Assembly: GCA_950097015.1 (NCBI GenBank)
Contig: CATNEN010000001.1
Location: forward strand, 13,826,001-13,890,000
DNA: 64,000 nucleotides
DNA from: Macrostomum hystrix
Taxonomy: Eukaryota; Animalia; Platyhelminthes
Direction: 5' to 3'
Shown here: positions 15,001-44,468 of the stretch, piece by piece
Layout: the number at the start of each line of letters is the position of its first letter
Position numbering within the stretch: the stretch's first letter is position 1
Notes under the pieces: generated by a model
The model's input: only the letters and a program-made list of their open reading frames with translations
The model's database searches: none
Told to the model about the DNA's origin: nothing
Made by a program: the position numbers and the translations under genes

Positions 15001-17735
15001 TCCAATCTACCTTCTCTACTTGTACAATCTCCCTTCTCTACTTATACAATCTACCTTCCCTCCTTATCCAATCTATCTTCTCTACTTGTACAATCTACCT
15101 TCCCTCCTTATCCAATCTACCTTCTCTACTTGTACAATCTACCTTCCCTCCTCATCCAATCTACCTTCTCTCCTTATCCAATCTACCTTCTCTCCTTATC
15201 CAATCTACCTTCCCTCCTTATCCAATCTACCTTCTCTCCTTATCCAATCTACCTTCCCTCCTTATCCAATCTACCTTCTCTCCTTATCCAATCTACCTTC
15301 TCTCCTTATCCAATCTACCTTCTCTCCTTATCCAATCTACCTTCTCTCCTTATCCAATCTACCTTCTCTCCTTATCCAATCTACCTTCTCTCCTTATCCA
15401 ATCTACCTTCTCTACTTGTACAATCTCCCTTCTCTACTTATACAATCTACCTTCCCTCCTTATCCAATCTATCTTCTCTACTTGTACAATCTACCTTCCC
15501 TCCTTATCCAATCTACCTTCTCTACTTGTACAATCTACCTTCCCTCCTCATCCAATCTACCTTCTCTACTTGTACAATCTACCTTCCCTCCTTATCCAAT
15601 CTACCTTCTCTACTTATACAATCTACCTTCCCTCCTTATCCAATCTACCTTCTCTACTTGTACAATCTCCCTTCTCTACTTATACAATCTACCTTCCCTC
15701 CTTATCCAATCTATCTTCTCTACTTGTACAATCTACCTTCCCTCCTTATCCAAACTACCTTCTTTACTTGTACAATCTACCTTCCCTCCTTATCCAATCT
15801 ACCTTCTCTACTTATCCAATCTACCTTCCCTCCTTATCCAATCTACCTTCTCTCCTTATCCAATCTACCTTCTCTCTTTATCCAATCTACCTTCTCTCCT
15901 TATCCAATCTACCTTCTCTCCTTATCCAATCTACCTTCTCTACTTGTACAATCTCCCTTCTCTACTTATACAATCTACCTTCCCTCCTTATCCAATCTAT
16001 CTTCTCTACTTGTACAATCTACCTTCCCTCCTTATCCAAACTACCTTCTTTACTTGTACAATCTACCTTCCCTCCTTATCCAATCTACCTTCTCTACTTG
16101 TACAATCTACCTTCCCTCCTCATCCAATCTACCTTCTCTACTTGTACAATCTACCTTCCCTCCTTATCCAATCTACCTTCTCTACTTATACAATCTACCT
16201 TCCCTCCTTATCCAATCTACCTTCTCTACTTGTACAATCTACCTTCCCTCAATAGGAGACCAAATAAGGTCTTATTTTTGTTCTGCGCGATAGAATGCAC
16301 TTTTGTGTGTTGACTTCCTGACATTGCACATGCAGACTGAGTTTATTGTCACTGTGTGCGCTTTTCAGAGTAAACGTTTTTTGCTCTGTTGACATTTTCT
16401 ATTCTATTTCTGATTTGCTTCGTTTATTTAGACTTTGGCTTTCTTTAGCTTCTTTAATAAAGTTTTTTAAAGGGAATAAAGTGAATATAATAAAGTTATA
16501 CTCACTCCCTATTCACTCCCTACTCTCACTCCCTACTCACTCCCTACTCATTCCCTACTCACTCCCTTCCTCTCCCTACTCACTCCCTTCCTCTCCCTAC
16601 TCACTCCCTTCCTCTCCCTACTCACTCCCTACTCACTCACTACTCACTCCCTACTCATTCCCTACTCACTCCCTTCCTCTCCCTACTCACTCCCTTCCTC
16701 TCCCTACTCACTCCCTTCCTCTCCCTACTCACTCCCTACTCACTCACTACTCACTCCCTTCCTCTCCCTACTCACTCCCTACTCACTTCCTACTCACTTC
16801 CTACTTACTCCCAACTCTCACTCCCTACTCACTCCCTACTCTCACTCCCTACTCACTCCCTACTCACTTCCTACTTTCTCCCAACTCTCACTCCCTACTC
16901 ACTCCCTACTCTCACTCCCTAATCACTTCCTACTCACTCCCTACTCACTCCCTACTCACTCCCTACTCTCACTCCCTAATCACTCCCTAATCACTCCCTA
17001 CTCACTCCCTACTCACTTCCTACTTACTCCTAACTCTCACTCCCTACTCACTCCCTACTCACTCCCTACTCACTTCCTACTCACTCCCTACCCTCACTCC
17101 CTACTCACTCCCTACTCACTCCCTTCCTCTCCCTACTCACTCCCTACTCACTCCCTACTCACTCCCTACTCACTCCCTACTCACTCCCTACTAACTCCAT
17201 ACTCACTCCCTACTTACTCCCAACTCTCACTCCCTACTCACTCCCTACTCACTCCCTACTCACTTCCTACTCACTCCCTACTCTCACTCCCTACTCACTC
17301 CCTACTCACTCCCTTCCTCTCCCTACTCACTCCCTACTCACTCCCTACTCACTTCCTACTCACTCCCTACTCTCACTCCCTACTCACTTCCTGCACTCTC
17401 CATAGTCATACCAACTCTCACACCTACTCACACCCTTCTCAAAACCAACTCTGTCCCTACTCAATCATCACTCGCATCCCTCGCATTGAATGATTATTAT
17501 TATTCAGCAATAAACTGGAAGCTTCAAAGCCTTCTTAGAAATGGACAATAATTTTACAGTTTAAATCAGGTAATCAATATAATCAGATTTTGTTTATTGA
17601 AAATTCGCATCAGATGACAGGCACAGACTCAACTATGGCTTGCTGAGCACAACCCGAGGCCAACCGATTCTACTAGCCACTCAGCAGAGCGTGACTGCCG
17701 TACGGAATTCGCCTACTGATAGTAGCAAGATCTAG
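3049..17735 (+). CDS. ACOT8: Acyl-CoA thioesterase II (ACOT8-like) paralog 2; 4 exons join(3049..3146,3747..3904,13375..14127,17614..17735), 376 aa
   Basis: All junctions are GT-AG and phase-compatible (2,1,1). Motifs MYGGLLVAQA, HSVQAYFLRAG, PIELRP, FWIR, AFLSD, ASLDH. C-terminal SKI is PTS1-like. Confidence 0.8.
3327..3610. repeat. 27-bp minisatellite (GACTGAGGCAGACACTGAAGTATCAGG)n in ACOT8-like intron 1
   Basis: About 10 tandem copies. Confidence 0.95.
4490..4760 (+). mobile_element. Degenerate 3' fragment of a non-LTR retrotransposon ORF2
   Basis: Translation ENRTCPKYTDEVERPVRVLFKC...YVPIRDEFIKQVTGAVQNFNSLTAEYKMLYLMTQE resembles a decayed C-terminal zinc-knuckle region of CR1/L2/RTE-type LINEs. 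Confidence 0.4.
5010..5310. repeat. AT-rich (AAT)n low-complexity tract
   Basis: Degenerate AAT/AAC/GAT triplets. Confidence 0.85.
6415..7860 (-). CDS. Orphan rhodopsin-like (class A-type) 7TM receptor, single coding exon, nested antisense in ACOT8-like intron 2
   Basis: 481-aa ORF with seven hydrophobic segments. TM1 GLAIN, TM2 SITAANLL, TM3 end SMDLYLTVNHSMRY (DRY-like), TM4 W, TM6 FVLTMLP, TM7 SPIILY. Long ECL2 and C-tail. Confidence 0.85.
   Translation of the reverse strand: MLLFSTEKIIELVATMLGLAINAVTMVTLCSWGKRKLTNRTRLLVSITAANLLAAIGATIMLVNTIHRPDLNQFCLNWTDMLIEAARNSGTILIMLGLCSLSMDLYLTVNHSMRYQIYSTRITKVSIAGTWILGLCLGFLSVLINLAMSGDDNAKPSTAPTLCQSSERQFQTEGLIGNAGRKLTHDLQYQMRHTRTSAFIVRATVMPRLLIPALPPAPHSPLKMGSNNVTMLHLTRYMGHATQTVVTAVCLLVISTCLALICRRILRPTCGQSRATARRRRGAWTIFLLLLAFVLTMLPSLLGELFMLLQIVLHTKTEILQNEVSFIMYVQPYLYALSVSFTVASPIILYTRMREVRSSYRNMMFGLQRRLNRAGSGAIGGATDAAVTAAGTVAAAVTNDATVAARLLASSSQALKLASRRRVRQDLLEIPLDDLQEADSFELNGAACFDRSPLVSGLNKWTDENEMDEDSRQLIANSVSL
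8838..10127. repeat. 19-bp minisatellite (TAGTCAGGAAGGGAGATGG)n
   Basis: About 68 tandem copies. Confidence 0.95.
10377..10887. repeat. (CAGT)n microsatellite, about 500 bp
   Basis: Almost perfect tetranucleotide repeat. Confidence 0.98.
11540..12800. repeat. 21-bp minisatellite (AGTAGATAAAGTAGACAGGAG)n with higher-order variants
   Basis: Tandem repeat; explains ORFs 11369..12845 on both strands. Confidence 0.95.
14349..16250. repeat. 22-bp minisatellite (CCTTCTCTCCTTATCCAATCTA)n in ACOT8-like intron 3
   Basis: About 86 copies, with a CTACTTGTAC variant. Confidence 0.95.
16499..17400. repeat. 11-bp degenerate repeat (TACTCACTCCC)n
   Basis: Tandem repeat. Confidence 0.9.
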
Positions 17736-25711: not shown

Positions 25712-28700
25712 TCAGGGCACCGCCAGCGACTTCGCAAACCGCTGCAGCTTTGCGTGGACCCAGCCGTCTCTCTGCAGGGCTACCGTCTCCATGGCAACAA
25801 GTCTACCGAACTCAGCTCTGACTGGATGCAGCCGCGCTCTCACCCACAGCTTCCGCTCCTCATCCTCCGAGCTCGAGTGACCGACGATGCAGCTGCGAGT
25901 GGAAATTCGCCACCGCTTCTCCCTGACCCAGCGGATCTTCTCCTCATCCTGGGACTCCATGGCGACGCGTCTCTCTTCCCTGACGGTCTCCATCTGTCGC
26001 AGGCTGAACTCCATGTGCTCAACTTGGTCGCTGTAGTGAGCCAGAGTGAGCAGCTCCTCCAAGTCCGGGTCCTCTTGCAGCTCTGAGCGCCACGCATCGA
26101 AGTCGATTGCTGTGCGATTGCGGAGCAGCTCAGCTTGGAGACTCCAGCTCAGGCAGCGGAAGTTCACGTACAGGTGCTCGGAGCGAGGCTGTGACAGTCT
26201 GGGCTGTGACAGTCTGGCTGTGAGCAGAGTCTGCGTGAACTCGGGAAGGAATGGGAATCGAGAAGGAGTGTCTGCTGGGAGGCAGTACCTCCACGCCCAG
26301 TCCGAGTCTGAAGGCAGCCAATAATCTCCGATATCACCAGGCCTCATTCCACTCTGAACTCTGTGACTCTGGAGCTCCATCGCGAGTCTCTCAGCCTCCT
26401 CGGAGTCTCTGAACTTCAAATGCGCCATGGCGGTCATGCACAGGGCGGCGCACTTGCACCACCGCAGCTGATGCAGGAGACTGAGCTGCCTCATCAGGGT
26501 GTCTCTGTCTGCAGACTCTGACTGCAGCTCGCAAACACAATGGTGCACTACACTGTACACGTCTGCTGACATCTCATAACTATGACCACATTTTTTCCTA
26601 ATCTGAGTGACAGCAGGCGGTGCTGTCAGTGGCAGCAGAGTGAACGGGTGAAAGTAGAAGTTCTCTGACTGCAGAGGTCTCACAAGCTGAGAGGTGAGAC
26701 AATCATCACAAGATGAGAGGTCTCTCATCTGCTCAGCCACTCCGCCGATGTCGCTTCTCAGCTCTCTCAGTCGGTCTCGAACCATCGCCTTCGTTTTGTC
26801 GAAGTCGCCGCCGATTCCTGCGTTCTTGAAGTAGAGCGGAGCTCCGGGCATGAAGAAGTGCGGCATGCACTCATTGGGTGAGCTGCTTGAGTCGATGAAG
26901 CTCAGCATCATGTCGAGAGACTCCTTGAGCAGTGAGATCAGACTCTGAGGCTGCCAAGCTTCAGCATTTGGGTCTGTGCCATGCTCCTTCAGCATGAAGA
27001 AGAGCAGAGTCTTTGCATGGTAGGTCTTGAGTCCAGGAGTGTCCAGAGTGAGTGGCAAATGTTTCTTGAAGATGAACTTGATGATTGAGAACAGCTGTCC
27101 CTGGACTGTGCTCAGCTGTCTCATGGCCTCTTTCTCTTGGAAGCTGAAGCTCACTCTGAGCTCATTGGTCTCATTCGGTCTGGTCGCCCTCACGAGGTGA
27201 ACAGAAGTGTTGCTGTGTCTAATCAGCTTCTTGACTCTGTCCCAACAGAAGCCACTGCAGCACCGGATCGCATGGCACGTGTCCTGAGCAGGCCGCACAC
27301 CGCATGCCTTGGTTGAGACGGCAGGTTGGCTGCCTGCAGTAGGTGATAACTCGTGTTATTTTTAAAAGCTTGTGTCAGTTTGTAAATTATTAAATAACTT
27401 TCAAGCTGGTTAAATCTGGTTAAGCTAAAAGCCTTGAAACACAAAGCCTCTATTAATTGTTGATAATTAATTGTCGCAAAGTTGCGAGAGAAAAACAATG
27501 AGTTTTGAACAACAACTTTTTAAGAAATGCAGTATGCTTGCCTTTAGTTGTTGTAGTTCCCACTAAGTAGTTAGCTGTGAGCACTTTTGACCCCAGCGAG
27601 ACCCAGAGAAATAAGAAGATAACAATATCCGATTACCGATCCGATTTCCGATAACTACCCGATGTCACTCACCCGACCCCATTGGCACCTGTGCGTGACC
27701 CTCCGTGACACGCAGCTTCAGGGCACCTCTGCATTCTTCATTTCTCCCATCGCAGCCGCCCTCCAAATGCAGCAGTTGGCCTTGAACAAGCACAGTCCAG
27801 TCAATGTCTGAGTCAGCCGCTGTCCTGCCGTTCACTTGCACCAGACTGTTGGCCCAGCCCTCTGCGAAGCTGCCTGTCATCTGCATCTGCGAGTTCTGAG
27901 TGAGGACTCGAGCGACTTCTTGCAGCCAGACAGCCATTCTCTGCTGACACTTGGCTCTCTCCTGAGTGAATCCCGCCTCGCTGAGCAGTCGGTGCAGTTC
28001 CTCACTGAGCTGCCTGTCCGTCTCTGGGTCGTCTCTGGGCCTGGAATGATGGGAATTAAGTCGGCTGATGGGTTGTACAGCTGCACAGACTGGCATCTCA
28101 AGCTGATCAGCTGAGAGTCCAGCTGCTGCTGCATTCAGACTGGCATCTCATGCTGATCAGCATAGGGGAGTTTCCAATCAGAATCAGAAACTCACTCAGC
28201 GAGACCCGAGTCGGTGCGGAGTCCAGCTGCCTTTTTCTTTTTTCTGCTGCTGGAAAAGGGCGCAGGTTTAGATTAGTTTTACCCGATACGGTCTGCACGA
28301 GTACAGCAAGGGCAAAAAACGGGTTAAAATATTTTAGAACATAAAAACGGACTTACTTCGAAGTTCTGTTCTCCAGCAGCCGCAGCACCTGCTGATGTCC
28401 CAGCTGCTCCGCCACCTGCGCGCATGTCTGGCCCCGACTGTCCCGATGACTCGCATCCGCTCCTCCGTCTATCAGAGTCTTGGCTGCTCGCACGTGACCC
28501 GCCTCACAAGCTCGCGACAGAGCTGTCCGACCCTGACTGTCTTCAGCTCGCACTGACGCACCGAGAACCACCAGCCCCTCGATGAGCTCGTGATGACCTG
28601 AATCAGCTGCCAGCATGAGAGCAGTGGCTCCTGTGCTGTCGGGCACATCGACATCGAATTCTCTGCTGAATCGCTCGTCATGGAGGAGTGTGAGAGCCAG

Positions 28701-31700
28701 TGCGACATGGCCATGGGAGATGGAGACACAGAGCAGCTGTGTGATCTGAGCTGGCTGCATTCGAGACAGAGTCTGGCTGAGAACATCGTTCCTGCCCTCA
28801 ATGGCCATCGAGGCGGTGAAGCTGAGGACTTGGCTGGACTGGAAGAGCCACTCGGGCTGAAGACCAAGGAAGAGGACGACATCTTCACACTGCTGAGAGC
28901 AAGCGGCGACTGCGCAGACACTTCTAATATTTTCTCTTACTCTTTGGTCAGAAACTTTCTGTTCCAAAAATTTGACCACTTCCAAATGACCATGAAATGC
29001 AGCAGATTCCGCAGCTTCCTTGCAGCACTGATCTCTCAGTGTTGGGTCAGTGATTTTCGAGACCAAATATTGGACCACTTTCAACTGACAATTGGTTGCA
29101 GAAGATTTCGCAACCTCCTTGCAGCACTGATCTCTCAGTGTTGGGTCAGCGAATGTCGGCACCAAAAATTTGACCACTTCCAACTGGCCATTGCTCGCAG
29201 CAGATTTCGCAGCCACCTCGCAGCACTGATCTCTTAGTGTTTGGTCAGCGATTTTCAGGACCAAATATTTGACCACTTCCAACTGACGATTAAATGCAGC
29301 AGATTCCGCAGCTTCCTTGCAGCACTGATCTAAAAGTGTTTTGTCAGCGATTATCGGCACCAAAAATTTGACCACTTCCAACTGACCCTTGATTGCAGCA
29401 GATTTCACAACCTCCTTGCAGCACTGATCTCTCAATGTTTGGTTAGCAATATTCAGCACCAAAAATTTGACCACTTCCCACTGACCCCTGATTGCAGCAG
29501 ATTCCGCAACCTCCTTGCAGCACTGATCTCTCAGTGTTTGGTCAGCGATTGTCAGCACCAAAAATTTGACCACTTCCAACTGACCCTTGATTGCTGCAGA
29601 TTTCGCAACCTTCTTGCAGCACTGATCTCTCAGTGTTTTGTCAGCGATTGTCGGCACCAAAAATTTGACCACTTCCAACTGACCATTGATTTCTGCAGAT
29701 TCCGCAGCCTCCTTGCAGCACTGATCTCTCAGTGTTTTGTCAGCAATTGTCGGCACCAAATATTGGATCACTTCCCACTGACGCTCTCTTGCTGCAGATT
29801 TCACAACCTCCTTGCAGCACCGATCTCTCAGTGTTTTGTCAGCAATTGTCGGCACCAAAAATTTGACCACTTCCAACTGACCCTTGATTGCAGCAGATTT
29901 CACAACCTCCTTGCAGCACTGATCTCTCAATGTTTGGTTAGCAATATTCAGCACCAAAAATTTGACCACTTCCCACTGACCCCTGATTGCAGCAGATTCC
30001 GCAGCCTCCTTGCAGCACTGATCTCTCAGTGTTTTGTCAGCAATTGTCGGCACCAAATATTGGATCACTTCCCACTGACGCTCTCTTGCTGCAGATTTCA
30101 CAACCTCCTTGCAGCACCGATCTCTCAGTGTTTTGTCAGCAATTGTCGGCACCAAAAATTTGACCACTTCCAAATGACCGTTGATTGCAGCAGATTTCGC
30201 AACCTCGTTGCAGCACCGATCTCTCAATGTTTTGTCAGCAATTGTCAGCACCAAAAATTTGACCACTTCCAAATGACCGTTGATTGCAGCAGATTTCGCA
30301 ACCTCCTTGCAGCACTGATCTCTCAGTGTTTGGGCAGCGATTTTTAGCACCAAAAATTTGACCACTTCCAACTGACCATTGATTGCTGCAGATTCTGCAA
30401 CCTCCTTGCAGCACCGATCTCTCAGTGTTTTGTCAGCAATTGTCGGCACCAAAAATTTGACCACTTCCAAATGACCCTTGATTGCTGCAGATTCTGCAAC
30501 CTCCTTGCAGCACTGAACTTTTAGTGTTTGATAGGCAATTGTCGGCACCAAAAATTTGACCACTTCCCACTGACACTCTCTTGCAGCCGATTCCGCAGCT
30601 TCCTTGCAGCACTGATCTCTCAGTGTTTTGTCAGCGATTTTCGGCACCAAAAATTTGACCACTTCCCACTGACGCTCTCTTGCTGCAGATTCCGCAACCT
30701 CCTTGCAGCACTGATCTCTCAGTGTTTGGTCAGCGATTGTCGGCACCAAAAATTTGACCACTTCCAAATGACCCTTGATTGCAGCAGATTCTGCAACCTC
30801 CTTGCAGCACTGATCTCTCAGTGTTTGGTCAGCAATTGTCGGCACCAAAAATTTGACCACTTCCAAATGACCCTTGATTGCTGCAGATTCTGCAACCTCC
30901 TTGCAGCACTGATCTCTCAGTGTTTGGTCAGCGATTGTCAGCACCAAAAATTCGACCACTTCCAAATGACCCTTGATTGCAGCAGATTTCGCAACAACCT
31001 TGCAGCACTGATCTTTTAGTTTTTTGTCAGCAATTGTTAGCACCAAAAAATTGACGACTTCCAACTGACCATAAAATGCAGCAGATTCCGCAACCTCCTT
31101 GCAGCACTGATATTTTACTGTTTGGTGAGCAATTTTCAGCACCAAATATTGCACCACTTCTAACTTACCATTGATTGCAGCTGATTTCGAAGCGTCCTTG
31201 AAGCACTGACGTCTCAGTTTTTGGTCAGCGATTTTCGGCAACAAATATTTGACCACTTCCAAATGACCCTTGATTGCTGCAGATTCTGCAACCTCCTTGC
31301 AGCACTGATCTCTCAGTGTTTGGTCAGCGATTGTCGGCACCAAAAATTTGACCACTTCCAACTGACCATTGATTGCTGCAGATTCTGCAACCTCCTTGCA
31401 GCACTGATCTCTCAGTGTTTGGTCAGCGATTGTCGGCACCAAAAATTTGACCACTTCCAACTGACCATTGATTGCTGCAGATTCTGCAACCTCCTTGCAG
31501 CACCGATCTCTCAGTGTTTGGTCAGCGATTGTCGGCACCAAAAATTTGACCACTTCCAAATGACCCTTGATTGCAGCAGATTTCGCAACCTCCTTGCCGC
31601 ACTGATCTCTCAGTGTTTGGTCAGCGATTGTCGGCACCAAAAATTTGACCACTTCCAACTGACCCTTGATTGCTGCAGATTCTGCAACCTCCTTGCAGCA

Positions 31701-33782
31701 CCGATCTCTCAGTGTTTGGTCAGCGATTGTCGGCACCAAAAATTTGACCACTTCCAACTGACCATTGATTGCTGCAGATTCTGCAACCTCCTTGCAGCAC
31801 CGATCTCTCAGTGTTTGGTCAGCGATTGTCGGCACCAAAAATTTGACCACTTCCAAATGACCCTTGATTGCAGCAGATTCTGCAACCTCCTTGCAGCACT
31901 GATCTCTCAGTGTTTGGTCAGAAATTGTCGGCACCAAAAATTTGACCACTTCCCACGAACGCTCTCTTGCAGCAGATTCCGCAACCTCTTTGCAGCACTG
32001 ATCTCTCAGTGTTTGGTCAGAAATTGTCGGCACCAAAAATTTGACCACTTCCAACATACCATTGATTGCAGCAGATTCCGCAACCTCCTTGCAGCACTGA
32101 TCTCTCAGTGTTTGGTCAGCGATTGTCGGCACCAAAAATTTGACCATTTCCCACGAACGCTCTCTTGCAGCAGATTCCGCAACCTCTTTGCAGCACTGAT
32201 CTCTCAGTGTTTGGTCAGCGATTGTCGGCACCAAAAATTTGACCACTTCCAACATACCATTGATTGCAGCAGATTCCGCAACCTCCTTGCAGCACTGATC
32301 TCTCAGTGTTTGGTCAGAAATTGTCGGCACCAAAAATTTGACCACTTCCAACATACCATTGATTGCAGCAGATTCTGCAACCTCCTTGCAGCACCGATCT
32401 CTCAGTGTTTGGTCAGCGATTGTCGGCACCAAAAATTTGACCACTTCCAAATGACCCTTGATTGCAGCAGATTTCGCAACCTCCTTGCAGCACTGATCTC
32501 TCAGTGTTTGGTCAGCGATTGTCGGCACCAAAAATTTGACCACTTCCAAATGACCCTTGATTGCAGCAGATTTCGCAACCTCCTTGCAGCACTGATCTCT
32601 CAGTGTTTGGTCAGCGATTGTCGGCACCAAAAATTTGACCACTTCCCACTGACGCTCTCTTGCTGCAGATTCCGCAACCTCCTTGCAGCACTGATCTCTC
32701 AGTGTTTGGTCAGCGATTGTCGGCACCAAAAATTTGACCACTTCCAAATGACCCTTGATTGCAGCAGATTTCGCAACCTCCTTGCAGCACTGATCTCTCA
32801 GTGTTTGGTCAGCAATTGTCGGCACCAAAAATTTGACCACTTCCAAATGACCCTTGATTGCAGCAGATTCCGCAACCTCCTTGCAGCACTGATCTCTCAG
32901 TGTTTGGTCAGCAATTGTCGGCACCAAAAATGTGACCACTTCCAACTGACCATTGATTGCAGCAGATTCCGCAACCTCCTTGCAGCACTGATCTCTCAGT
33001 GTTTTGTCAGCAATTGTTGGCACCAAAAATTTGACCACTTCCAACTTACCATTTATTGCAGCAGATTTCGCAGCCTTCTTGCAGCACTTATCTCTTCTTT
33101 TTTGGTCAGCAATTGTCGGCAAAAAATATTTTACCACTTCCAACTGACCCATTCTTGCAGCAGATTTCGCAGCCTCCTTGCAGCACTGAACTCTCAGTTT
33201 TTCGTCAGCGATTGTCGGCAGCAAAAATTTGACCACTTCCAACTGACCCCTGATTGCAGCAGATTCCGCAAACTCCTTGCAGCACTGATCTCTCAGTGTT
33301 TGGTCAGTAATTGTCGGCAGCAAAAATTTGACCACTTCCAACTTACCATTGATTGCAGCAGATTTCGCAGCCTTCTTGCAGCACCGATCTCTTTTTTTTT
33401 GGTCAGCAATTGTCGGCAACAAATATTTTACCACTTCCAACTGACCCATTCTTGCAGCAGATTTCGCAGTCTCCTTGCAGCACTGAACTCTCAGTTTTTC
33501 GTCAGCGATTGTCGGCACCAAAAATTTGACCACTTCCAACCGACCCTTGATTGCTGCAGATTCCGCAGCCTCCTTGCAGCACTGATCTCTCAGTGTTTGG
33601 TCAGCAACTGTCTGCACCAGAAGTTTCACAATTTCCCAGTGACGGTGATTCGCAGCAAGACGCCAATGCACTTTACACAGTCGATCCCTTTTTGAGCTGC
33701 TTTTGATTGATTTTAAGTGATTTCGAACTTCGGTTTCCAGCCCCTCTTCTACAGCTCGCCTAAAGCTGATTTTCTGTCCCAT
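25712..33782 (-). CDS. Ankyrin-repeat array + Mab-21/cGAS-like nucleotidyltransferase (cGLR) copy A; complement(join(25712..27333,27673..28139,28196..28249,28357..33782)), about 2,522 aa
   Basis: The donor GTAAGT overlaps the apparent stop of the 1809-aa ORF, and the phases (2,2,1) are compatible. NTase motifs TGSFAEG...DSDID, third acidic site QDTCHAIRC, HLV, ELRVSFSFQE, KTYHAKTLLF, CMPHFFMP. About 47 33-aa ANK-like repeats plus canonical ANK repeats (GATALMLAA, GRTALSRAC). The 54-nt mini-exon is the least certain part. Confidence 0.85.
28960..33600 (-). repeat. Coding 99-bp tandem array (about 47 ankyrin-like units CCKEVAESAAxxxxLEVVKFLVPTIADQTLRDQ)
   Basis: Directly visible 99-bp periodicity; reading frame open throughout. 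Confidence 0.95.
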
Positions 33783-34776
33783 TTGTCAGTCGCTTGGAGA
33801 TTTTAGTAACCTTCTTGACTTTCTTGATCTCTGAAAGTTGGATCGAAAATTTAATTGAAAAACTTTGGAGGGCTCAAGCTGTCCAGGAGGGCTTGAAGCA
33901 GTTGCATTTTTTTCTCTGAGTAGTTGCAGCTCAACTGTGAATTTCAGTCAGTTGAGGAAGGCGGCAATTTTGTCCTGGAGTCTGCTGTGTTGAGTTGCCC
34001 TTAGCAACCATGCGCCCTGACTCTGACGTGTACTCTTTAACTGAGTACTTGAGAGGAGATGAGCTGAGAAGAAGTGAGGAGATACTGACATCCTGCCCCA
34101 GCTAACTGCATAGCAAATAAGAGAGCTCGCATCCTCAGCAGTCACAGGGCATTGTTATGGCCTGGTCGGGCAGCTTCTCTCTCTCCACCTCCCTCCCTCC
34201 AGGCTGGAGTCGCCCATCGGGGTCGGGGAAGGGGGCGGCAGCCGGAGTGCCTCTCACCCCAGGCCCGCACAGAGCAGACCAAACCAGGGGAGGACTTTGA
34301 TGCCTGAAGGGTAGGGACGAGAGTACACACCCCCCACACAACGCCTCACACCCGGTCCAACGCACAAACACAAACAAGCAGGCAAGCAGAAGGCAGGGGC
34401 TAAGGTAAGGGAGGAACGAACCAGCGACCATTTGAAAGTGAGGCAGCGACACTAGCGACACTCACGCCCTCCATCCCATCTCTCTGCCTCATTGGGCAAA
34501 TGCTCAAGTTATTAAATTATCAGTTCTTCAGGCAAATTAAACAGCTAAAACATTCACTCTTTCTTACTCCTATCTATCAAACCATCTTTTTATCAGCCAG
34601 TTTTATGATCAGCTGGAGTCTCTGGGTCTCTACAAGGGCATGCTGAGAGTAGGGCTGCGTTGATGAGGCCTGGTGTTGAGCTGAATCTCAAAGCTTTCTG
34701 TCTGCTGTTCTGAGATTCACTAAAAGTGAGCAGATAAATGGATGCTGCTCTTACTCTGACTCATTTCAGTGTAAAA

Positions 34777-39070: not shown

Positions 39071-42000
39071 TCATGACAGGCGGTGACTTCGGCAGCTGTC
39101 TTCACTAGCTGTCATGCGGCTTCCTGCCCGTCTGCTCGACCTGCAGTCGGACAGGGCAGACTCACTCTCCGTTTCCATAGAAACTGAATGTGATTGATTT
39201 GATTTTCTCAGTCGCTTCAGCTTCTCCCTGACCCAGCGGATCTTCTCCTCATCCTGCGTCTCCATGGCGACGCGTCTCTCGTCCCTGACGGTCTCCATCT
39301 GTCGCAGGCTGAAATCCACGTGCTCAACTTGGTCGCTGTAGTGAGCCAGAGTGAGCAGCTCCTCCAAGTCCGGGTCCTCTTGCAGCTCTGAGAGCCACGC
39401 ATCGAAGTCGATTGCTGTGCGATTGCGGAGCAGCTCAGCTTGGAGACTCCAGCTCAGGCAGCGGAAGTTCACGTACAGGTGCTCAGAGCGAGGCTGTGAC
39501 AGTCTGGCTGTGAGCAGAGTCTGCGTGAACTCGGGAAGGAATGGGAATCGAGGCGGAGTGTCTGCGGGGAGGCAGAACTTCCACGCCCAGTCCGACTGGA
39601 TGGAATTCAGGTTTTTTACCTCATCTGGACTCAAGCCACGATTGACTTGCCAGTATTGCAAATCCTGAGTGATGTTTTTAGCTTCCTTGGAGTTTCCGAG
39701 TTTCAAATTTACCATAATCACCGAACACAGGGTGGCGCACCTGCACCATCGCAATGAAAGCAGGATGCTGAGCTCCCTCATCAGAGTGTCTCCATCGCAT
39801 TCTTTGAATTGCAGCTTGCTCATGCAATTGTGCATAATACTGTACACGTCAACGAACTTGAAATGTCGATCATAATAATTTGTCATTTCTCTAATCTGAG
39901 TGACAGCAGGTGGCGCTGTCAGTGGCAGCAGAGTGAACGGGTGAAAGTAGAAGTTCTCTGACTGCAGTGGTCTCACAAGTCTCCTCATCTGCTCAACCAC
40001 TCCGCCGATGTCGCTTCTCAGCTCTCTCAGTCGGTCTCGAACCATCGCCTTCGTTTTGTCGAAGTCGCCGCCGATTCCTGCGTTCTTGAAGTAGAGCGGA
40101 GCGTCGGGCATGAAGAAGTGCGGCATGCACTCATCGGGTGAGCTGCTTGAGTCGATGAAGCTCAGCATCATGTCGAGAGACTCCTTCAGCAGTGAGATCA
40201 GATTCTGAGGCTGCCAAGCTTCAGCATTCGGGTCTGTGCCATGCTTCTCCAGCATGAAGAAGAGCAGAGTCTTTGCATGGTAGGTCTTGAGTCCAGGTGT
40301 GTCCAGAGTGAGTGGCAAGTGTCTCTTGAAGATGAACTTGATGACTGAGAACAGCTCTGAGCTCATTGGTCTCATTCGGTCTGGTCGCCCTCACGAGGTG
40401 AACAGAAGTCAGCTCTGAATTAGTTTTTATCAACTGTTCAACCTGAGGCTCACAGAATGGGCTGCAGCACCGGATCGCATGGCACGTGTCCTGAGCAGGC
40501 CGCACACCGCATGCCTTGGCTGAGACGGCAGGTTGGCTGCCTGCAGCATTGATGAACGGAACTTCATAAACGTTCAACTAACAGATACACGGTGTTGTGC
40601 ATCGGACTGATTACTCACCTGACCCTACAAAGACCTGAGCATGACCCTGTGCTACCTGTAGCCTTGTTGCTAATTCACATCCAAGTTTGCGCTTGCAGCC
40701 GCCCTCTAGATGCGAACTTTGCACTTTAGCCAGCACAGTCCAGTCAATGTCTGAGTCAGCCGCTGTCCTGCCGTTCACTTGCACCAGACTGTTGGCCCAG
40801 CCCTCTGCGTAGCTGCCTGTCATCTGCCTGCCATCCTGGGCGAGGACTTGAGCGACTCCTTCCAGCCAGTCAGCCATTCTCTGCTGACACTCCGCTCTCT
40901 CCCGAGTGAATCCCGCCTTGTTGAACAGTCGGTGCAGTTCCTCACTGAGCTGCCTGTCCCGCTGAGTGTGGTCAATAAATCTGGAAAGGAAGCTAAGAAT
41001 CATTGGAAAGCCATTTAGCTGCTCATCCCTTCGTTCTAGAAACGATTCTGTTCTGGGAATCCAACGAGAAACTGGTCCATTGGTGTTTCTCATCGTGACA
41101 AACGCTGCATTAAAAAAAGAAAAAATATTTCTTACTCGTCGAGTTCCGAATTGCCACAGTTCCCTGTCTTGGCTCCCTTCTTGGCGCTGGAATTCAAATA
41201 TACGCAACAATTGCACTCGTCAAATGTAAATAGGTAATTATTCATTATTAATACAATATAAGCATCTCCAAATTCTATAGGATGTTTTTCATAATTCAAG
41301 GGCCACTACTCCATTTAGCTTCTAATTTAATAGTCCCGGTCATACGCTGTGGACCTTCATGTCTATAGTTTTTTTAACCATTTTTCTCACCTTCGGGTCT
41401 CCAGCAGCCGCAGCACCTGCTGATGTCCCAGCTGCTCCGCCACCTGCGCGCACGTCTGGCTTCGACTGTCCCGATGACTCGCATCCGCTCCTCTGTCCAT
41501 CAGGGTCTTGGCTGCTCGCACGTGACCCGCCTCACAAGCTCGCGACAGAGCTGTCCGACCCTGACTGTCTTCAGCTCGCACTGACGCACCGAGATCCACC
41601 AGCCTCTCAATGAGCTCGTGATGACCTGCATCAGCTGCCACCATGAGAGCAGTGGCTCCTGTGCCGTCTGGCAGATCGACATGTTCTTTGCTGAAGCGCT
41701 TGTCATGGAGGAGTGTGAGAGCCAGTGCGACATGGCCATGGGAGATGGAGACACCGAGCAGCTGTGTGATCTGAGCTGGCTGCATTCGAGACAGAGTCTG
41801 GCTGAGAACAGAATTTCTGCCCTCAATGGCCATCGAGGCGGTGAAGCTGATGATGTTTCCTGATTGAAGCAGCCATTCAGGCTCGATGTGAAGGAAGGCA
41901 GCCACACCTTCCTGGAGTCGAGAGCAGGCCGCAACAGCGCATTGGCGACGGAAGTGGATTAGCAAGTCAGCATTCGACACAGACTCAATTAGGAACTTGA

Positions 42001-42445
42001 GCACCTCCAACTGACCGGTCCTGGCAGCGGACTCAGCAGCCTTTCCACAACACTCATCTCTTTCAACCGTGAGGAACTCTACAAAGAATTTGACTAGCTC
42101 AAGATGACCTGATCTCGCAGCTGATCTAACAAGCTTTTTACATTGCTGATCTCTGACAGTTGGATCTGAAACTCTCAGCACAAGACATCGCGCCACTTCC
42201 AACTGACCAGACTTGACCGCTGTCTCAGCAGCCAACAGGCAGCACTGATCCTTTTCCCTATCGCCATGAATTGTCTGGAGAAGAAATTTAGCCACATCCA
42301 GATGACCATGGCAGGCTGCAACTCGCGCACTCGCCTTGCAAATAGAATTTCTCATCTCGATGCTGTCAGCTTTGCGAACATGGAGACGAACTTTCCTCAT
42401 GTTGCCTGTTCTCGCAGCTTCAGTGATGCTCATTTTCTGGCCCAT
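39071..42445 (-). pseudogene. Ankyrin + Mab-21/cGLR copy B, frameshifted; exons 42445..41391, 41186..41136, 40980..40619, 40540..39071
   Basis: Same exon structure and phases as copy A, with TGSYAEG...DSDID intact. A 59-bp deletion near 40355 removes VSFSFQEKEAMRQLSTVQGQ and shifts the frame (premature stop at 40221-40223). Confidence 0.75.
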
Positions 42446-42949: not shown

Positions 42950-44468
42950 GGTGGTGGGTGATGGATTGATGGTGGTGGGTGATGAATTCGATGGTGGTGG
43001 GGTGATGGATTGATGGTGGTGGGTGATGAATTCGATGGTGGTGGGGTGATGGATTCGGTGGTGGTGGGGTGATGGATTCGGTGGTGGTGGGGTGATGGAT
43101 TCGATGGTGGTGGGTGATGGATTCGATGGTGGTGGGTGATGGATTCGGTGGTGGTGGGTGATGGATTCGGTGGTGGTGGGGTGATGGATTCGGTGGTGGT
43201 GGGGTGATGGATTCGGTGGTGGTGGGGTGATGGATTCGGTGGTGGTGGGGTGATGGATTCGGTGGTGGTGGGGTGATGGATTCGGTGGTGGTGGGGTGAT
43301 GGATTCGGTCGTGGTGGGGTGATGGATTCGGTGGTGGTGGGGTGATGGATTCGGTGGTGGTGGGGTGATGGATTCGGTGGTGGTGGGGTGATGGATTCGG
43401 TGGTGGTGGGGTGATGGATTCGGTCGTGGTGGGGTGATGGATTCGGTCGTGGTGGGGTGAAGGATTCGATGGTGGTGGGGTGATGGATTCGATGGTGGTG
43501 GGGTGATGGATTCGATGGTGGTGGGGTGATGGATTCGATGGTGGTGGGTGATGGATTCGATGGTGGTGGGGTGATGGATTCGATGGTGGTGGGGTGATGG
43601 GTTCGGTGGTGGTGGTGTGATGGATTCGATGGTGGTGGGGTGATGGATTCGATGGTGGTGGGTGATGGATTCGATGGTGGTGGGGTGATGGATTCGATGG
43701 TGGTGGGGTGATGGGTTCGGTGGTGGTGGTGTGATGGATTCGATGGTGGTGGGGATTCGGTGGTGGTGGGGTGATGGATTCGGTGGTGGTGGGGTGATGA
43801 ATTGATGGTGGTGGGGTGATGGATTCGGTGGTGGTGGGGTGATGGATTCGATGGTGGTGGGGTGATGGATTCGATGGTGGTGGGGTGATGGATTCGATGG
43901 TGGTGGGGTGATGGATTCGATGGTGGTGGTGTGATGGGTTCGGTGGTGGTGGGGTGATGGATTCGATGGTGGTGGGGATTCGGTGGTGGTGGGGTGATGG
44001 TTTCGGTGGTGGTGGTGTGATGGATTCGATGGTGGTGGGGATTCGGTGGTGGTGGGGTGATTTTCTCGGTGGTGGTGGGGTGATGGATTCGGTGGTGGTG
44101 GTGTGATGGATTCGATGGTGGTGGGGATTCGGTGGTGGTGGGGTGATGGATTCGATGGTGGTGGGGATTCGGTGGTGGTGGGGTGATTTTTTCGGTGGTG
44201 GTGGGGTGATGGATTCGATGGTGGTGGGGATTTGTTGGTGGTGGGGTGATGGGTTCGGTGGTGGTGGGGTGATGGATTCGATGGTGGTGGGGTGATGAAT
44301 TCGATGGTGGTGGGGTGATGGATTCGATGGTGGTGGGGTGATGGATTCGATGGTGGTGGGGTGATGGATTCGATGGTGGTGGGGTGATGGATTCGATGGT
44401 GGTGGGGTGATGGATTCGATGGTGGTGGGGTGATGGATTCGATGGTGGTGGGGTGATGGATTCGATGG
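42950..44468. repeat. G-rich satellite of about 22 bp (GGTGGTGGGGTGATGGATTCGAT/GGT)n, left arm
   Basis: Tandem repeat. Confidence 0.95.

What the first reader, a model, noticed from the sequence alone, without database searches (positions are those of the whole stretch)
28960..33600. DARPin/TALE-like variable code in about 47 near-identical ankyrin repeats
Seen: the 33-aa framework is highly conserved (occasional substitutions), while variation concentrates in the cassette after SAA: IKGH, INGQ, INGM, INGK, IRGQ, IKGQ, RMGQ, RERQW, RERSW, RECQW, FYGQ, FNRQ, SNGQ, TNCQ, FHGH, plus an E/K toggle (AES/AKS). Known: the two residues after 'AA' in helix 1 are among the positions randomised in DARPin libraries to create binding specificity. 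Inferred: the array acts as a natural combinatorial binding surface whose repeat order encodes ligand specificity, possibly for a polymeric ligand.
Basis: partly seen in the sequence, partly recalled or inferred. Interest (0 to 1): 0.85.

Follow-up and report, generated by a model that had tools for sequence, protein, structure and literature searches.

The report
Hypervariable ankyrin array on flatworm cGLR
A flatworm gene carries 47 very similar ankyrin-type repeats that differ mainly at two to four exposed residues per repeat and are spliced to a cGAS-like signalling enzyme; this resembles the variable sensor repeats of fungal immune receptors, but a TALE-like positional 'code' is not shown.

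Summary
One intact minus-strand reading frame (33782-28353, 1809 aa) holds exactly 47 head-to-tail 33-residue ankyrin-type units with no indels. Variation peaks at unit positions 23, 24 and 26, the residues after 'SAA', which align to DARPin library positions 13, 14 and 16.

The same positions are the most variable in 8 of 9 long paralogous arrays of this genome and in Macrostomum lignano relatives. Non-synonymous change at 23+24 exceeds synonymous change (omega about 1.5-2.6). The framework gives about 0.7. Selection for diversity is therefore suggested, not proven.

The array is exon 1 of a four-exon gene of about 2,489 codons. It starts with a myristoylation-type MGQKIS and ends in a cGAS-like (Mab-21) nucleotidyltransferase with GS...DxD in place. 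There are dozens to more than 100 copies, and the scan has met this family before on other DNA of this genome.

The units are atypical. AlphaFold predicts a long helix where the ankyrin beta-hairpin should be, and the DARPin 'finger' positions are conserved, including an invariant Cys-Cys.

A TALE-like order code or a polymeric ligand has no support. The closest precedent is the highly internally conserved ANK repeats of fungal NLRs. Array length could not be checked with reads.

The parts
33618..33782 (-). Start codon and 55-aa N-terminal cap. It begins MGQKISF, which fits the N-myristoylation pattern G-{EDRKHPFYW}-x(2)-[STAGCN]-{P}. An in-frame TGA lies two codons upstream.
   Evidence: MGQ..S/MGN..S starts are kept in paralogs (L013, L014, L022, L023, L027, L028) and in M. 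lignano P0010, P0015, P0021, P0024.
28965..33617 (-). 47 tandem 33-aa ankyrin-type units (aa 56-1606), consensus VPTIADQTLRDQCCKEVAESAAINGQLEVVKFL. Hypervariable positions are 23, 24 and 26 (plus 25/27 in the RERQW-type words and the E/K toggle at 19).
   Evidence: TRF; register; entropy and dN/dS; Pfam; AlphaFold2 model of units 8-19 with pLDDT 93; Foldseek hits to DARPins, ankyrin-1 and AnkB.
28357..28964 (-). End of exon 1 (aa 1607-1809 of the ORF): three degenerate units, then three canonical ankyrin repeats. This is the family-specific segment shared with all paralogs.
   Evidence: Ank E=5e-12 on this piece; paralogs 43-89% identical; M. lignano 52-76%.
28250..28356 (-). Intron 1 (107 nt, GTAAGT...CAG). 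The ORF's TAA stop sits inside the donor site and is spliced out.
   Evidence: Sequence. The joint 28249/28357 (CT..AC on the + strand) is present in contigs of runs X3 and X2 and absent from DNA run X1. At the 90% likeness used, these contigs may come from close paralogs.
28196..28249 (-). Mini-exon 2 (54 nt) encoding a lysine-rich linker, ..SRKKKKAAGLRTDSGLA..
   Evidence: A loose end at 28195 in X3/X2 contigs continues into exon-3-like sequence.
27673..28040 (-). Exon 3: nucleotidyltransferase core segment with GSFAEGW...DSDID (GS and DxD catalytic motifs).
   Evidence: In the alignment of 12 paralogs, G75, S76 and D99 are invariant and D95, D97 nearly so. The same motif is in M. lignano proteins. 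The boundaries were read from splice consensus and frame, not from reads.
25712..27333 (-). Exon 4: Mab-21_C (HhH/H2TH-like) domain plus a C-terminal extension of about 370 aa, ending at the stop codon.
   Evidence: Pfam Mab-21_C at 27.6 bits (cut-off 24.1); PDB cGAS-like receptor 1 (8gjy) E=0.009; profile E=0.007. The junction reads ..VPMGSG|SQPAVSTKACGVRPAQDTCHAI, matching the M. lignano consensus.

Best explanation
The array is the N-terminal, probably membrane-tethered (myristoylated) recognition or scaffold solenoid of an ankyrin-fused cGAS-like receptor. The gene belongs to a Macrostomum-specific, massively expanded family. The units are kept alike by unequal crossing-over and short-tract gene conversion. 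A stripe of exposed residues at the end of the long inner helix and the turn after it (positions 23, 24, 26, 27, with 19 and in paralogs 20) is free, or pushed, to diversify. Each paralog thereby presents a different binding surface. Inferred, not shown: a protein or other ligand binding along this stripe controls the fused nucleotidyltransferase, which makes a nucleotide second messenger. Diversity works at the level of the gene family and of alleles, as in fungal NLR repeat domains, not as a per-repeat positional code.
For: Shown:
- The frame is intact, with no stop and no indel across 47 units. About 5-9 stop-creating changes would be expected if it were unselected (P=0.006 to 8e-5).
- Variation is concentrated at positions 23/24/26.
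- Positions 23 and 24 are among the five most variable in 8 of 9 long arrays of this genome; 27 and 19 are so in 6 of 9. Position 23 is top in 4 of 5 M. lignano arrays.
- Pairwise dN/dS is 2.0 in the cassette against 0.64 elsewhere.
- Tree-based counts on 222 distinct units from 21 arrays give omega(23+24)=2.55 against the array-wide dS (bootstrap range of dS 7.2-11.3 against dN 23.2) and 1.45 against local dS (p=0.09). Position 24 alone gives 3.1 (p=0.0125). The framework gives 0.7.
- Synonymous change at the cassette is not raised when the cassette is kept in the tree, so this is not a mutation hot spot.
- E/K at position 19 combines freely with the cassette words, and cassette states do not follow the framework tree, which indicates shuffling.
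- The AlphaFold2 model (pLDDT 93) puts 23/24 in the last turn of helix 1 and 25/26 in the turn. A helical wheel puts 12, 16, 19, 23 and 13, 17, 20, 24 on the side opposite the small conserved residues 14, 18, 21, 22.
- The register equals DARPin x13/x14.
- The gene context is a cGAS-like enzyme with conserved GS..DxD, a splice joint seen in contigs, and dozens of paralogs with 4 to 47 units.
- Precedent: fungal NLR ANK repeats with the same evolutionary regime (PMC4986451). ANK-cGLR fusions are listed in bioRxiv 10.1101/2023.02.22.529553.
Against: - Omega above 1 is only marginal when judged against the cassette's own synonymous changes (p=0.03-0.09).
- The trees of 99-nt recombining units are poor, so event counts are approximate.
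- The positions after 'AA' are the least constrained positions of ankyrin repeats in general (established knowledge), so concentration alone is also what neutral drift predicts.
- Framework omega of about 0.7 shows weak constraint on single units.
- No ligand, no enzyme activity and no expression pattern is known.
- No model coordinates were available, so exposure rests on secondary structure plus a helical wheel.
- The NTase fold itself could not be confirmed by structure: the full-length model had pLDDT below 50 there.
- The family is intracellular, and a non-immune role cannot be excluded.
Confidence: 0.55

Rival explanations
1. Neutral by-product. The array is a generic spacer, spring or scaffold that expanded by replication slippage or unequal crossing-over in a minisatellite-rich genome. 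The 'cassette' is simply where ankyrin repeats tolerate substitutions, so the variation carries no specificity.
For: The window holds 48 tandem-repeat rows, so this is a very repeat-prone genome. Framework omega is about 0.7 and event-based whole-array omega about 0.8-1.0. Omega at the cassette judged on local dS is 1.1-1.5 and not significant for the window array alone. Each cassette word has one DNA spelling, so words spread by duplication. Earlier notes report similar variable-groove ANK arrays on ion-channel genes of the same genome.
Against: dN at 23+24 is 2-3 times the array-wide dS. The same positions recur in independent arrays and in another species, with different residue sets. Cassette variants sit at intermediate frequency while most framework variants are rare. 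The reading frame is clearly maintained.
Confidence: 0.3
2. True positional code. Each unit reads one element of a linear polymer (nucleic acid, glycan or extended peptide) through its two to four variable residues, so the order of units spells the target, as in TALE effectors.
For: There are two adjacent hypervariable residues per near-constant repeat, placed at a helix-turn-helix junction, which is topologically like the TALE RVD loop. The vocabulary is limited: 18 words in this array. Long ankyrin solenoids are known to bind extended peptides along the inner groove; AnkB/AnkR structures are among the fold matches. The fused enzyme family includes nucleic-acid sensors.
Against: There is no homology to TALE repeats. 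The array is near neutral in charge (net +17 over 1551 aa). Ankyrin stacking advances about 1 nm per repeat (established knowledge), which does not match base spacing. Order follows duplication history. Cassette strings are not conserved between the closest paralogs.
Confidence: 0.05
3. Artefact or dead gene. The 47-unit length is an assembly error, or the locus is a decaying pseudogene copy of the family.
For: Only short Logan contigs (about 90-250 nt) were available. None spans the array, one 200-nt bin (30900-31099) has no depth in any run, and the best DNA run holds only 0.38 of the sampled words. Other copies of the family are reported as frameshifted.
Against: Units are 12% different on average and 42 of 47 are distinct, which long reads can place. 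The contig is 27.5 Mb. All four exons are open with canonical splice sites and catalytic motifs. Exact-match contigs occur inside the array and at its 5' end. No second copy or haplotig exists in the assembly.
Confidence: 0.07

Closest known systems
Highly internally conserved ANK/TPR/WD repeat domains of fungal NOD-like receptors (Dyrka et al. 2014, PMC4986451; Podospora het-d/het-e work)
   Same: Both have tandem repeats kept alike by concerted evolution and vary in repeat number between paralogs or alleles. A few hypervariable positions lie on the inner-helix face with signs of positive selection. Both belong to large, fast-evolving intracellular receptor families.
   Different: Here the signalling module is a cGAS-like nucleotidyltransferase at the C-terminus, not a NACHT/NB-ARC NOD domain with an N-terminal effector. 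The host is an animal, where that paper found such repeats in only 0.8% of repeat proteins. The array is far longer (47 against 7 to more than 16). The beta-hairpin positions, which vary in the fungal case, are conserved here.
DARPins (designed ankyrin repeat proteins; library positions 2, 3, 5, 13, 14, 33)
   Same: Same 33-residue register, aligned without gaps to DARPin 6mol. The AA-xx-GH-LE(V/I)V core is shared, and the two most variable residues coincide with library positions 13 and 14. DARPins are among the top Foldseek matches, with TM up to 0.6.
   Different: Positions 33, 2, 3 and 5 are conserved (R, Q, C, K). TPLH and GADVNA are replaced by KEVAES and IADQTL. AlphaFold predicts a continuous 17-18-residue helix instead of the beta-turn. 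Positions 16 and 17 (GH-L) also vary.
Ankyrin-fused cGAS-like receptors (cGLRs) catalogued by Li et al. 2023 (bioRxiv 10.1101/2023.02.22.529553), e.g. in the coral Stylophora pistillata
   Same: Same domain layout of ANK repeats plus a Mab-21/cGAS-type NTase, and multi-copy families in invertebrates.
   Different: [quoted passage not shown] Here there are dozens to more than 100 copies, arrays of up to 47 units (73 reported elsewhere in this genome), and a myristoylation-type N-terminus.
TALE repeats (Xanthomonas TAL effectors)
   Same: Near-identical units of 33-35 residues with two adjacent hypervariable residues at a helix-helix junction. Arrays evolve by recombination.
   Different: No sequence homology and a different fold family. 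TALEs are bacterial DNA-binding effectors with one base read per repeat. There is no evidence here for nucleic-acid binding or for an order code.
24-repeat membrane-binding domain of ankyrin-R/B/G
   Same: Both are long ankyrin superhelices. The inner groove binds extended, unstructured peptide segments of many partners. The C-terminal half of ankyrin-1 is a structural match (TM 0.59-0.62).
   Different: Ankyrin repeats there are all different and ancient, with canonical beta-hairpins and no hypervariable stripe, and the protein is not fused to an enzyme.

Membership tests
Ankyrin repeat (Pfam clan CL0465) | 33-residue period and a significant match to the Ank profile HMMs | tested here: met
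   Period 99 nt. Ank_2 E=3.4e-161, Ank_4 E=9e-119, Ank E=3e-95 on the whole ORF. An 8-unit piece scores Ank_2 E=6e-28.
Ankyrin repeat (Pfam clan CL0465) | TPLH motif and beta-hairpin/loop 'finger' between repeats (L-shaped unit) | tested here: not met
   In the 47 units TPLH is replaced by EVA[EK] and GADVNA by IADQTL. Pfam Ank matches only profile positions 9-30 there. Two AlphaFold2 models give a 17-18-residue helix through the hairpin region, while the three C-terminal canonical repeats keep short helices and loops. This is a prediction only.
Ankyrin repeat (Pfam clan CL0465) | Stacked solenoid similar to solved ankyrin domains | tested here: met
   Foldseek finds DARPin fusions, ankyrin-1, AnkB and FEM1 with probability 1.0 and TM up to 0.59-0.62.
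DARPin-like binding surface | Variation at all six library positions (2, 3, 5, 13, 14, 33) | tested here: not met
   Only 13 and 14 (unit positions 23, 24) are hypervariable. Positions 33, 2, 3 and 5 (unit positions 10, 12, 13, 15) have entropy 0.49, 0.85, 0 and 0.30 bits.
TALE repeat | Homology to the TAL effector repeat; a basic, DNA-wrapping superhelix | tested here: not met
   No TAL_effector family among Pfam hits at E<=1. Array pI is 8.2 with net charge +17 over 1551 aa.
cGAS-like receptor / Mab-21 nucleotidyltransferase | Mab-21 C-terminal (HhH/H2TH-like) domain | tested here: met
   PF20266 at 27.6 bits against a cut-off of 24.1 on exon 4. It is also found in the window's second copy (31.6 bits) and in five M. 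lignano relatives. PDB cGLR1 8gjy gives E=0.007-0.009.
cGAS-like receptor / Mab-21 nucleotidyltransferase | NTase catalytic motifs GS and [DE]x[DE] | tested here: met
   GSFAEGW...DSDID in exon 3. G75, S76 and D99 are invariant and D97 nearly so in 12 paralogs. M. lignano carries the same motif with Y in place of F (GSYAEGW...DSDID). The third catalytic acid was not located.
cGAS-like receptor / Mab-21 nucleotidyltransferase | cGAS-type fold and synthesis of a nucleotide second messenger | tested here: inconclusive
   The full-length AlphaFold2 model of M. lignano P0024 has pLDDT below 50 over the enzyme part. The profile of exon 3 found only designed helical proteins in the PDB. Activity is not testable here.
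Fungal-type NLR (STAND) with internally conserved repeats | Central NACHT or NB-ARC NOD domain | tested here: not met
   No NACHT or NB-ARC hit in any exon. The array works like these repeats but is not a member of the family.
Fungal-type NLR (STAND) with internally conserved repeats | Repeats at least 85% identical over at least 100 aa, repeat-number variation, hypervariable inner-face sites | tested here: met
   85% identity to consensus (76% pairwise; 82% in the centre). Paralogs carry 4 to 47 units. Hypervariable positions are documented. Allelic repeat-number polymorphism was not testable.

The most novel reading that the evidence does not exclude
The Macrostomum ANK-cGLR family is a germline-encoded, combinatorially diversified receptor repertoire. 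Homogenised helical-finger ankyrin arrays act as modular readers of extended ligands (for example pathogen peptides), with two to four specificity residues per unit. Unit shuffling creates new specificities that switch on a fused cyclic-nucleotide synthase. In effect this would be an animal counterpart of fungal NLR repeat diversification, wired to cGAS-type signalling and possibly programmable like DARPins.
Probability: 0.12. Interest if true: 0.85.

Novelty: new variant of a known kind. Interest (0 to 1): 0.55.

Why it matters
cGAS-like receptors are now seen as a major family of animal pattern-recognition receptors, but the ligands of most are unknown, and how new specificities arise is an open question. 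This family may answer it in one lineage by attaching a long, self-homogenising ankyrin solenoid with a hypervariable exposed stripe. That evolutionary device was documented so far for fungal NLRs and is rare in animals. If the stripe binds ligands, the arrays would give a direct handle on cGLR ligand discovery through paralog-specific pull-downs. They would also offer a natural ankyrin scaffold, without beta-hairpins, for binder engineering. If the variation is neutral, the locus is still a clean example of concerted evolution in a coding minisatellite.

Tried and rejected
1. Assembly check with reads. Only Logan contigs of 90-250 nt were on offer, and none spans the array. The best DNA run holds 0.38 of the words, and one bin had zero depth in all runs. 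The array length is therefore neither confirmed nor refuted.
2. Haplotig or allele comparison. The 5' flank has no second copy above 93% identity, so no allelic repeat string could be compared.
3. Structure of the enzyme part. AlphaFold2 on a full-length M. lignano relative with a 10-row alignment gave pLDDT below 50 over the NTase, so it is unusable for fold search. A profile of exon 3 against PDB sequences returned only spurious designed helical barrels.
4. Surface mapping by solvent accessibility. Model coordinates are not exposed to scripts, so exposure was argued from DSSP boundaries and a helical wheel only.
5. Simple higher-order repeat. Rejected: only short diagonal runs of near-identical units were found.
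6. Mutation hot spot at the cassette. Rejected: synonymous events there are not elevated when the cassette is kept in the tree.
7. Literature. No paper was found on Macrostomum cGLRs or on hypervariable ANK arrays in animal cGLRs.
8. The spliced product was never joined or searched as one sequence.


Full report
**What is there.**
- Tandem Repeats Finder finds one array at 28964-33626: period 99, 47.1 copies, 89% matches, no indels, score 6918.
- The array lies inside a single minus-strand ORF, 33782-28353, of 1809 aa.
- In register the protein is a 55-aa cap beginning MGQKISF, then exactly 47 units of 33 aa (aa 56-1606). Three degenerate units and three canonical ankyrin repeats follow.
- Pfam assigns the units to the ankyrin clan: Ank_2 E=3.4e-161 for the ORF and E=6e-28 for an 8-unit piece.
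- The long plus-strand ORFs over the array (for example 31221-33695) are antisense by-products of a stop-free repeat unit.
The E/K toggle at unit position 19 is 28:19.
- 'Near-identical' is somewhat generous. Units are 76% identical pairwise (85% to consensus, 82% in the centre), and 42 of 47 are distinct at DNA level.

**Where the variation sits.**
- Entropy per position peaks at 24 (2.15 bits), 26 (1.83) and 23 (1.30). Next come 7, 17, 2, 19 and 3 (about 1 bit each).
- C13 and S20 are invariant, and 14, 21, 22, 28-30 and 33 nearly so.
- The 15-nt cassette differs by 0.25 per nt between units, against 0.10 for the other 84 nt. Neighbouring units 9 and 10 differ at 3 framework and 6 cassette nucleotides.
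- A gap-free phmmer alignment to DARPin 6mol aligns SAA-IK-GH-LEVVKFL with LAA-xx-GH-LEIVEVL.
- The same alignment shows that the other four library positions (33, 2, 3, 5) correspond to R10, Q12, C13 and K15. These are conserved, so the resemblance to a DARPin library is partial.

**Is it selection?**
- Pairwise Nei-Gojobori counts give dN/dS 2.0 for positions 23-27 and 0.64 for the rest. Pairs of units are not independent.
- Counting distinct codon states on a minimum spanning tree puts 11.5 of 77.5 non-synonymous events on two of 33 codons in this array. The enrichment is 5- to 10-fold in paralog arrays.
- The last count used a FastTree tree of units with Fitch reconstruction, on 222 distinct units from 21 arrays. 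Results were:
  - omega(23+24)=2.55 against the array-wide dS (dN 23.2; bootstrap range of dS 7.2-11.3);
  - omega(23+24)=1.45 against the cassette's own synonymous changes (p=0.09);
  - position 24 alone gives 3.1 (p=0.0125), and position 19 gives 1.7 against the array-wide dS;
  - the framework gives 0.7 (nine arrays).
- Synonymous events at the cassette are not elevated when the cassette is left in the tree, so a mutation hot spot is unlikely.
- Hiding the cassette from tree building inflates both kinds of change there. Cassette history therefore differs from framework history, which indicates conversion or shuffling.
- E/K at position 19 occurs with each of the common words: IKGHL 6 E and 5 K; RERQW 2 and 2.
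- Each word has a single DNA spelling, so words spread by copying, not by convergence.
Positive selection is suggested rather than demonstrated, because the trees are weak and these are the least constrained positions of ankyrin repeats in general.

**The pattern is a family property.**
- The unique C-terminal piece of the ORF finds dozens of paralogs, mostly on the same 27.5-Mb contig, with open frames of 236-1810 aa.
- In 8 of 9 paralog arrays with at least 8 full units, positions 23 and 24 are among the five most variable. Positions 27 and 19 are so in 6 of 9. Each array has its own set of words.
- The nearest public relatives are Macrostomum lignano proteins, 52-76% identical in the C-terminal piece.
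- Those proteins show the same framework (V..VADQ..RD.CC...A.SAA..G..EVVKFL) and again peak at position 23 (4 of 5 arrays) and 24 (2 of 5).
- The genome is therefore a Macrostomum-type flatworm, with 220 Mb in 42 contigs.
- The window's second copy (39071-42445) has only four dissimilar units. Short heterogeneous arrays and long homogenised ones thus coexist.

**Array history.**
- Distance from the consensus by unit shows two homogenised blocks, units 8-24 (4.2 nt) and 28-33 (6.5 nt). They are separated by diverged units 25-27 (14.3), with diverged edges (about 9).
- Identical units lie scattered (10=30, 36=39, 38=43, 19=22, 11=12).
- This is the signature of unequal crossing-over and conversion, and it explains much of the order of the words.
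- The frame is clearly maintained. With 101-187 inferred substitutions, 5-9 stop-creating changes would be expected if unselected (P=0.006 to 8e-5). There are also no indels.

**Predicted structure.**
- AlphaFold2 on units 8-19, with nine 12-unit rows as the alignment, gives pLDDT 93 and pTM 0.77.
- Every unit is a long helix (unit positions 7-24) plus a short helix (27 to position 3 of the next unit), with no beta-hairpin.
- The same shape appears in the array of an M. lignano relative, whose three C-terminal canonical repeats keep short helices and long loops.
- Foldseek matches DARPin fusions, ankyrin-1, AnkB and FEM1, with TM up to 0.6.
- Positions 23/24 are the last turn of the long helix, 25/26 are the turn, and 27 starts the second helix.
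- On a helical wheel the variable positions 12, 16, 19, 23 (100-160 degrees) and 13, 17, 20, 24 (200-260 degrees) lie opposite the small conserved residues 14, 18, 21, 22. The variable residues therefore line one exposed side, increasingly so towards the turn.

**Gene context.**
- The TAA that ends the ORF lies inside a perfect donor (TCGAA|GTAAGT). The joint 28249/28357 (GT..AG on the minus strand) is present in contigs of runs X3 and X2 and absent from DNA run X1. At 90% likeness these contigs could come from close paralogs.
- The gene continues through a 54-nt lysine-rich mini-exon into an exon with GSFAEGW...DSDID. The last exon carries Mab-21_C, at 27.6 bits against a cut-off of 24.1.
- The exon 3/4 junction reproduces the M. 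lignano consensus ..GSQPAV...ACGVRPAQDTCHAI.
- Counted, not joined, the four exons give about 2,489 codons.
- The paralogs with downstream sequence in the fetched loci share this layout. GS and the DxD are invariant or nearly so in 12 paralogs and in M. lignano.
- The N-terminus MG-x-x-x-S is kept in distant paralogs and in M. lignano, which suggests N-myristoylation.
- Sequence links to solved cGLRs are weak (8gjy E=0.007-0.009), and the enzyme part did not fold confidently. 'cGAS-like' therefore rests on the Pfam domain plus the motifs.
- A STING ligand-binding-domain-like ORF exists on contig 2 at 26.2 bits, just under the cut-off of 27.

**Comparison with what is known.**
- Li et al. list ANK-fused cGLRs among domain architectures. 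They state that most platyhelminths have only Mab21-like proteins.
[quoted passage not shown] They found it rare in animals (0.8%).
- No paper was found on Macrostomum cGLRs or on hypervariable arrays in animal cGLRs.
- Earlier notes of this scan have found the ANK-cGLR family repeatedly in this genome. They also report variable-groove ankyrin arrays on ion-channel genes. The first point agrees with my reading; the second strengthens the neutral rival.

**Verdict.**
A variable exposed stripe on a receptor-family solenoid is real, recurrent, and evolving at or above the neutral rate.
- A TALE-like order code or a polymeric ligand has no support: there is no TALE homology, the charge is near neutral, order reflects duplication history, and strings are not conserved between paralogs.
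- The array length itself could not be verified with the short contigs available.
- I rate it a new variant of known kinds: fungal-NLR-like repeat diversification on an ANK-cGLR.

Noticed in passing
window 28965-33617 (-), unit positions 13-14: Every unit carries Cys-Cys (C13 in 47 of 47, C14 in 45 of 47; 94 cysteines in the array). The pair is conserved as D.CC in all paralogs and in M. lignano. It aligns to DARPin positions 3-4, the beta-turn tip, but is predicted to lie inside the long helix. Packing, metal binding, redox or lipidation roles are all open.
   Followed up: partly
window 39071-42445 (-): A second ANK-cGLR gene of the same family lies here, with only four dissimilar units and an MGQKMS start. 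Its last exon matches in two overlapping ORFs (40224-40577 and 39074-40390), so it may carry a frameshift or an extra intron.
   Followed up: partly
window 28196-28249 (-): A 54-nt mini-exon between the array and the enzyme encodes a lysine-rich linker (SRKKKKAAGLRTDSGLA), possibly a nuclear-localisation-like or lipid-binding patch.
   Followed up: partly
G000:C2:9104529-9104996 (-) = L031:1501-1968: An ORF here resembles the STING ligand-binding domain (PF15009, 26.2 bits, E=5.7e-6, just under the cut-off of 27). It is a candidate receptor for the products of this cGLR family.
   Followed up: partly
window 30900-31099: This bin (diverged units 26-28) has zero contig depth in all four public runs laid, including the best DNA run. 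It could be a filter effect or a real difference between samples.
   Followed up: no
window, whole (e.g. 8834-10128, 14350-16250, 42950-44468): The window is extraordinarily rich in non-coding minisatellites (48 TRF rows, periods 10-60, up to 128 copies). Strand composition is very skewed locally, with GC skew up to +/-0.8.
   Followed up: no
window 6415-7860 (-): An ORF of 481 aa matches the rhodopsin-family 7TM receptor profile (7tm_1, E=1e-9).
   Followed up: no
window 33787 and upstream: Contigs of runs X3 and X4 match the start of the coding region but diverge upstream of 33787 into a different 5' leader (83-117 nt). Another X3 contig matches the genomic 5' flank exactly (33718-33837). 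The divergent leader could come from a paralog's UTR or from alternative or trans-spliced leaders.
   Followed up: no
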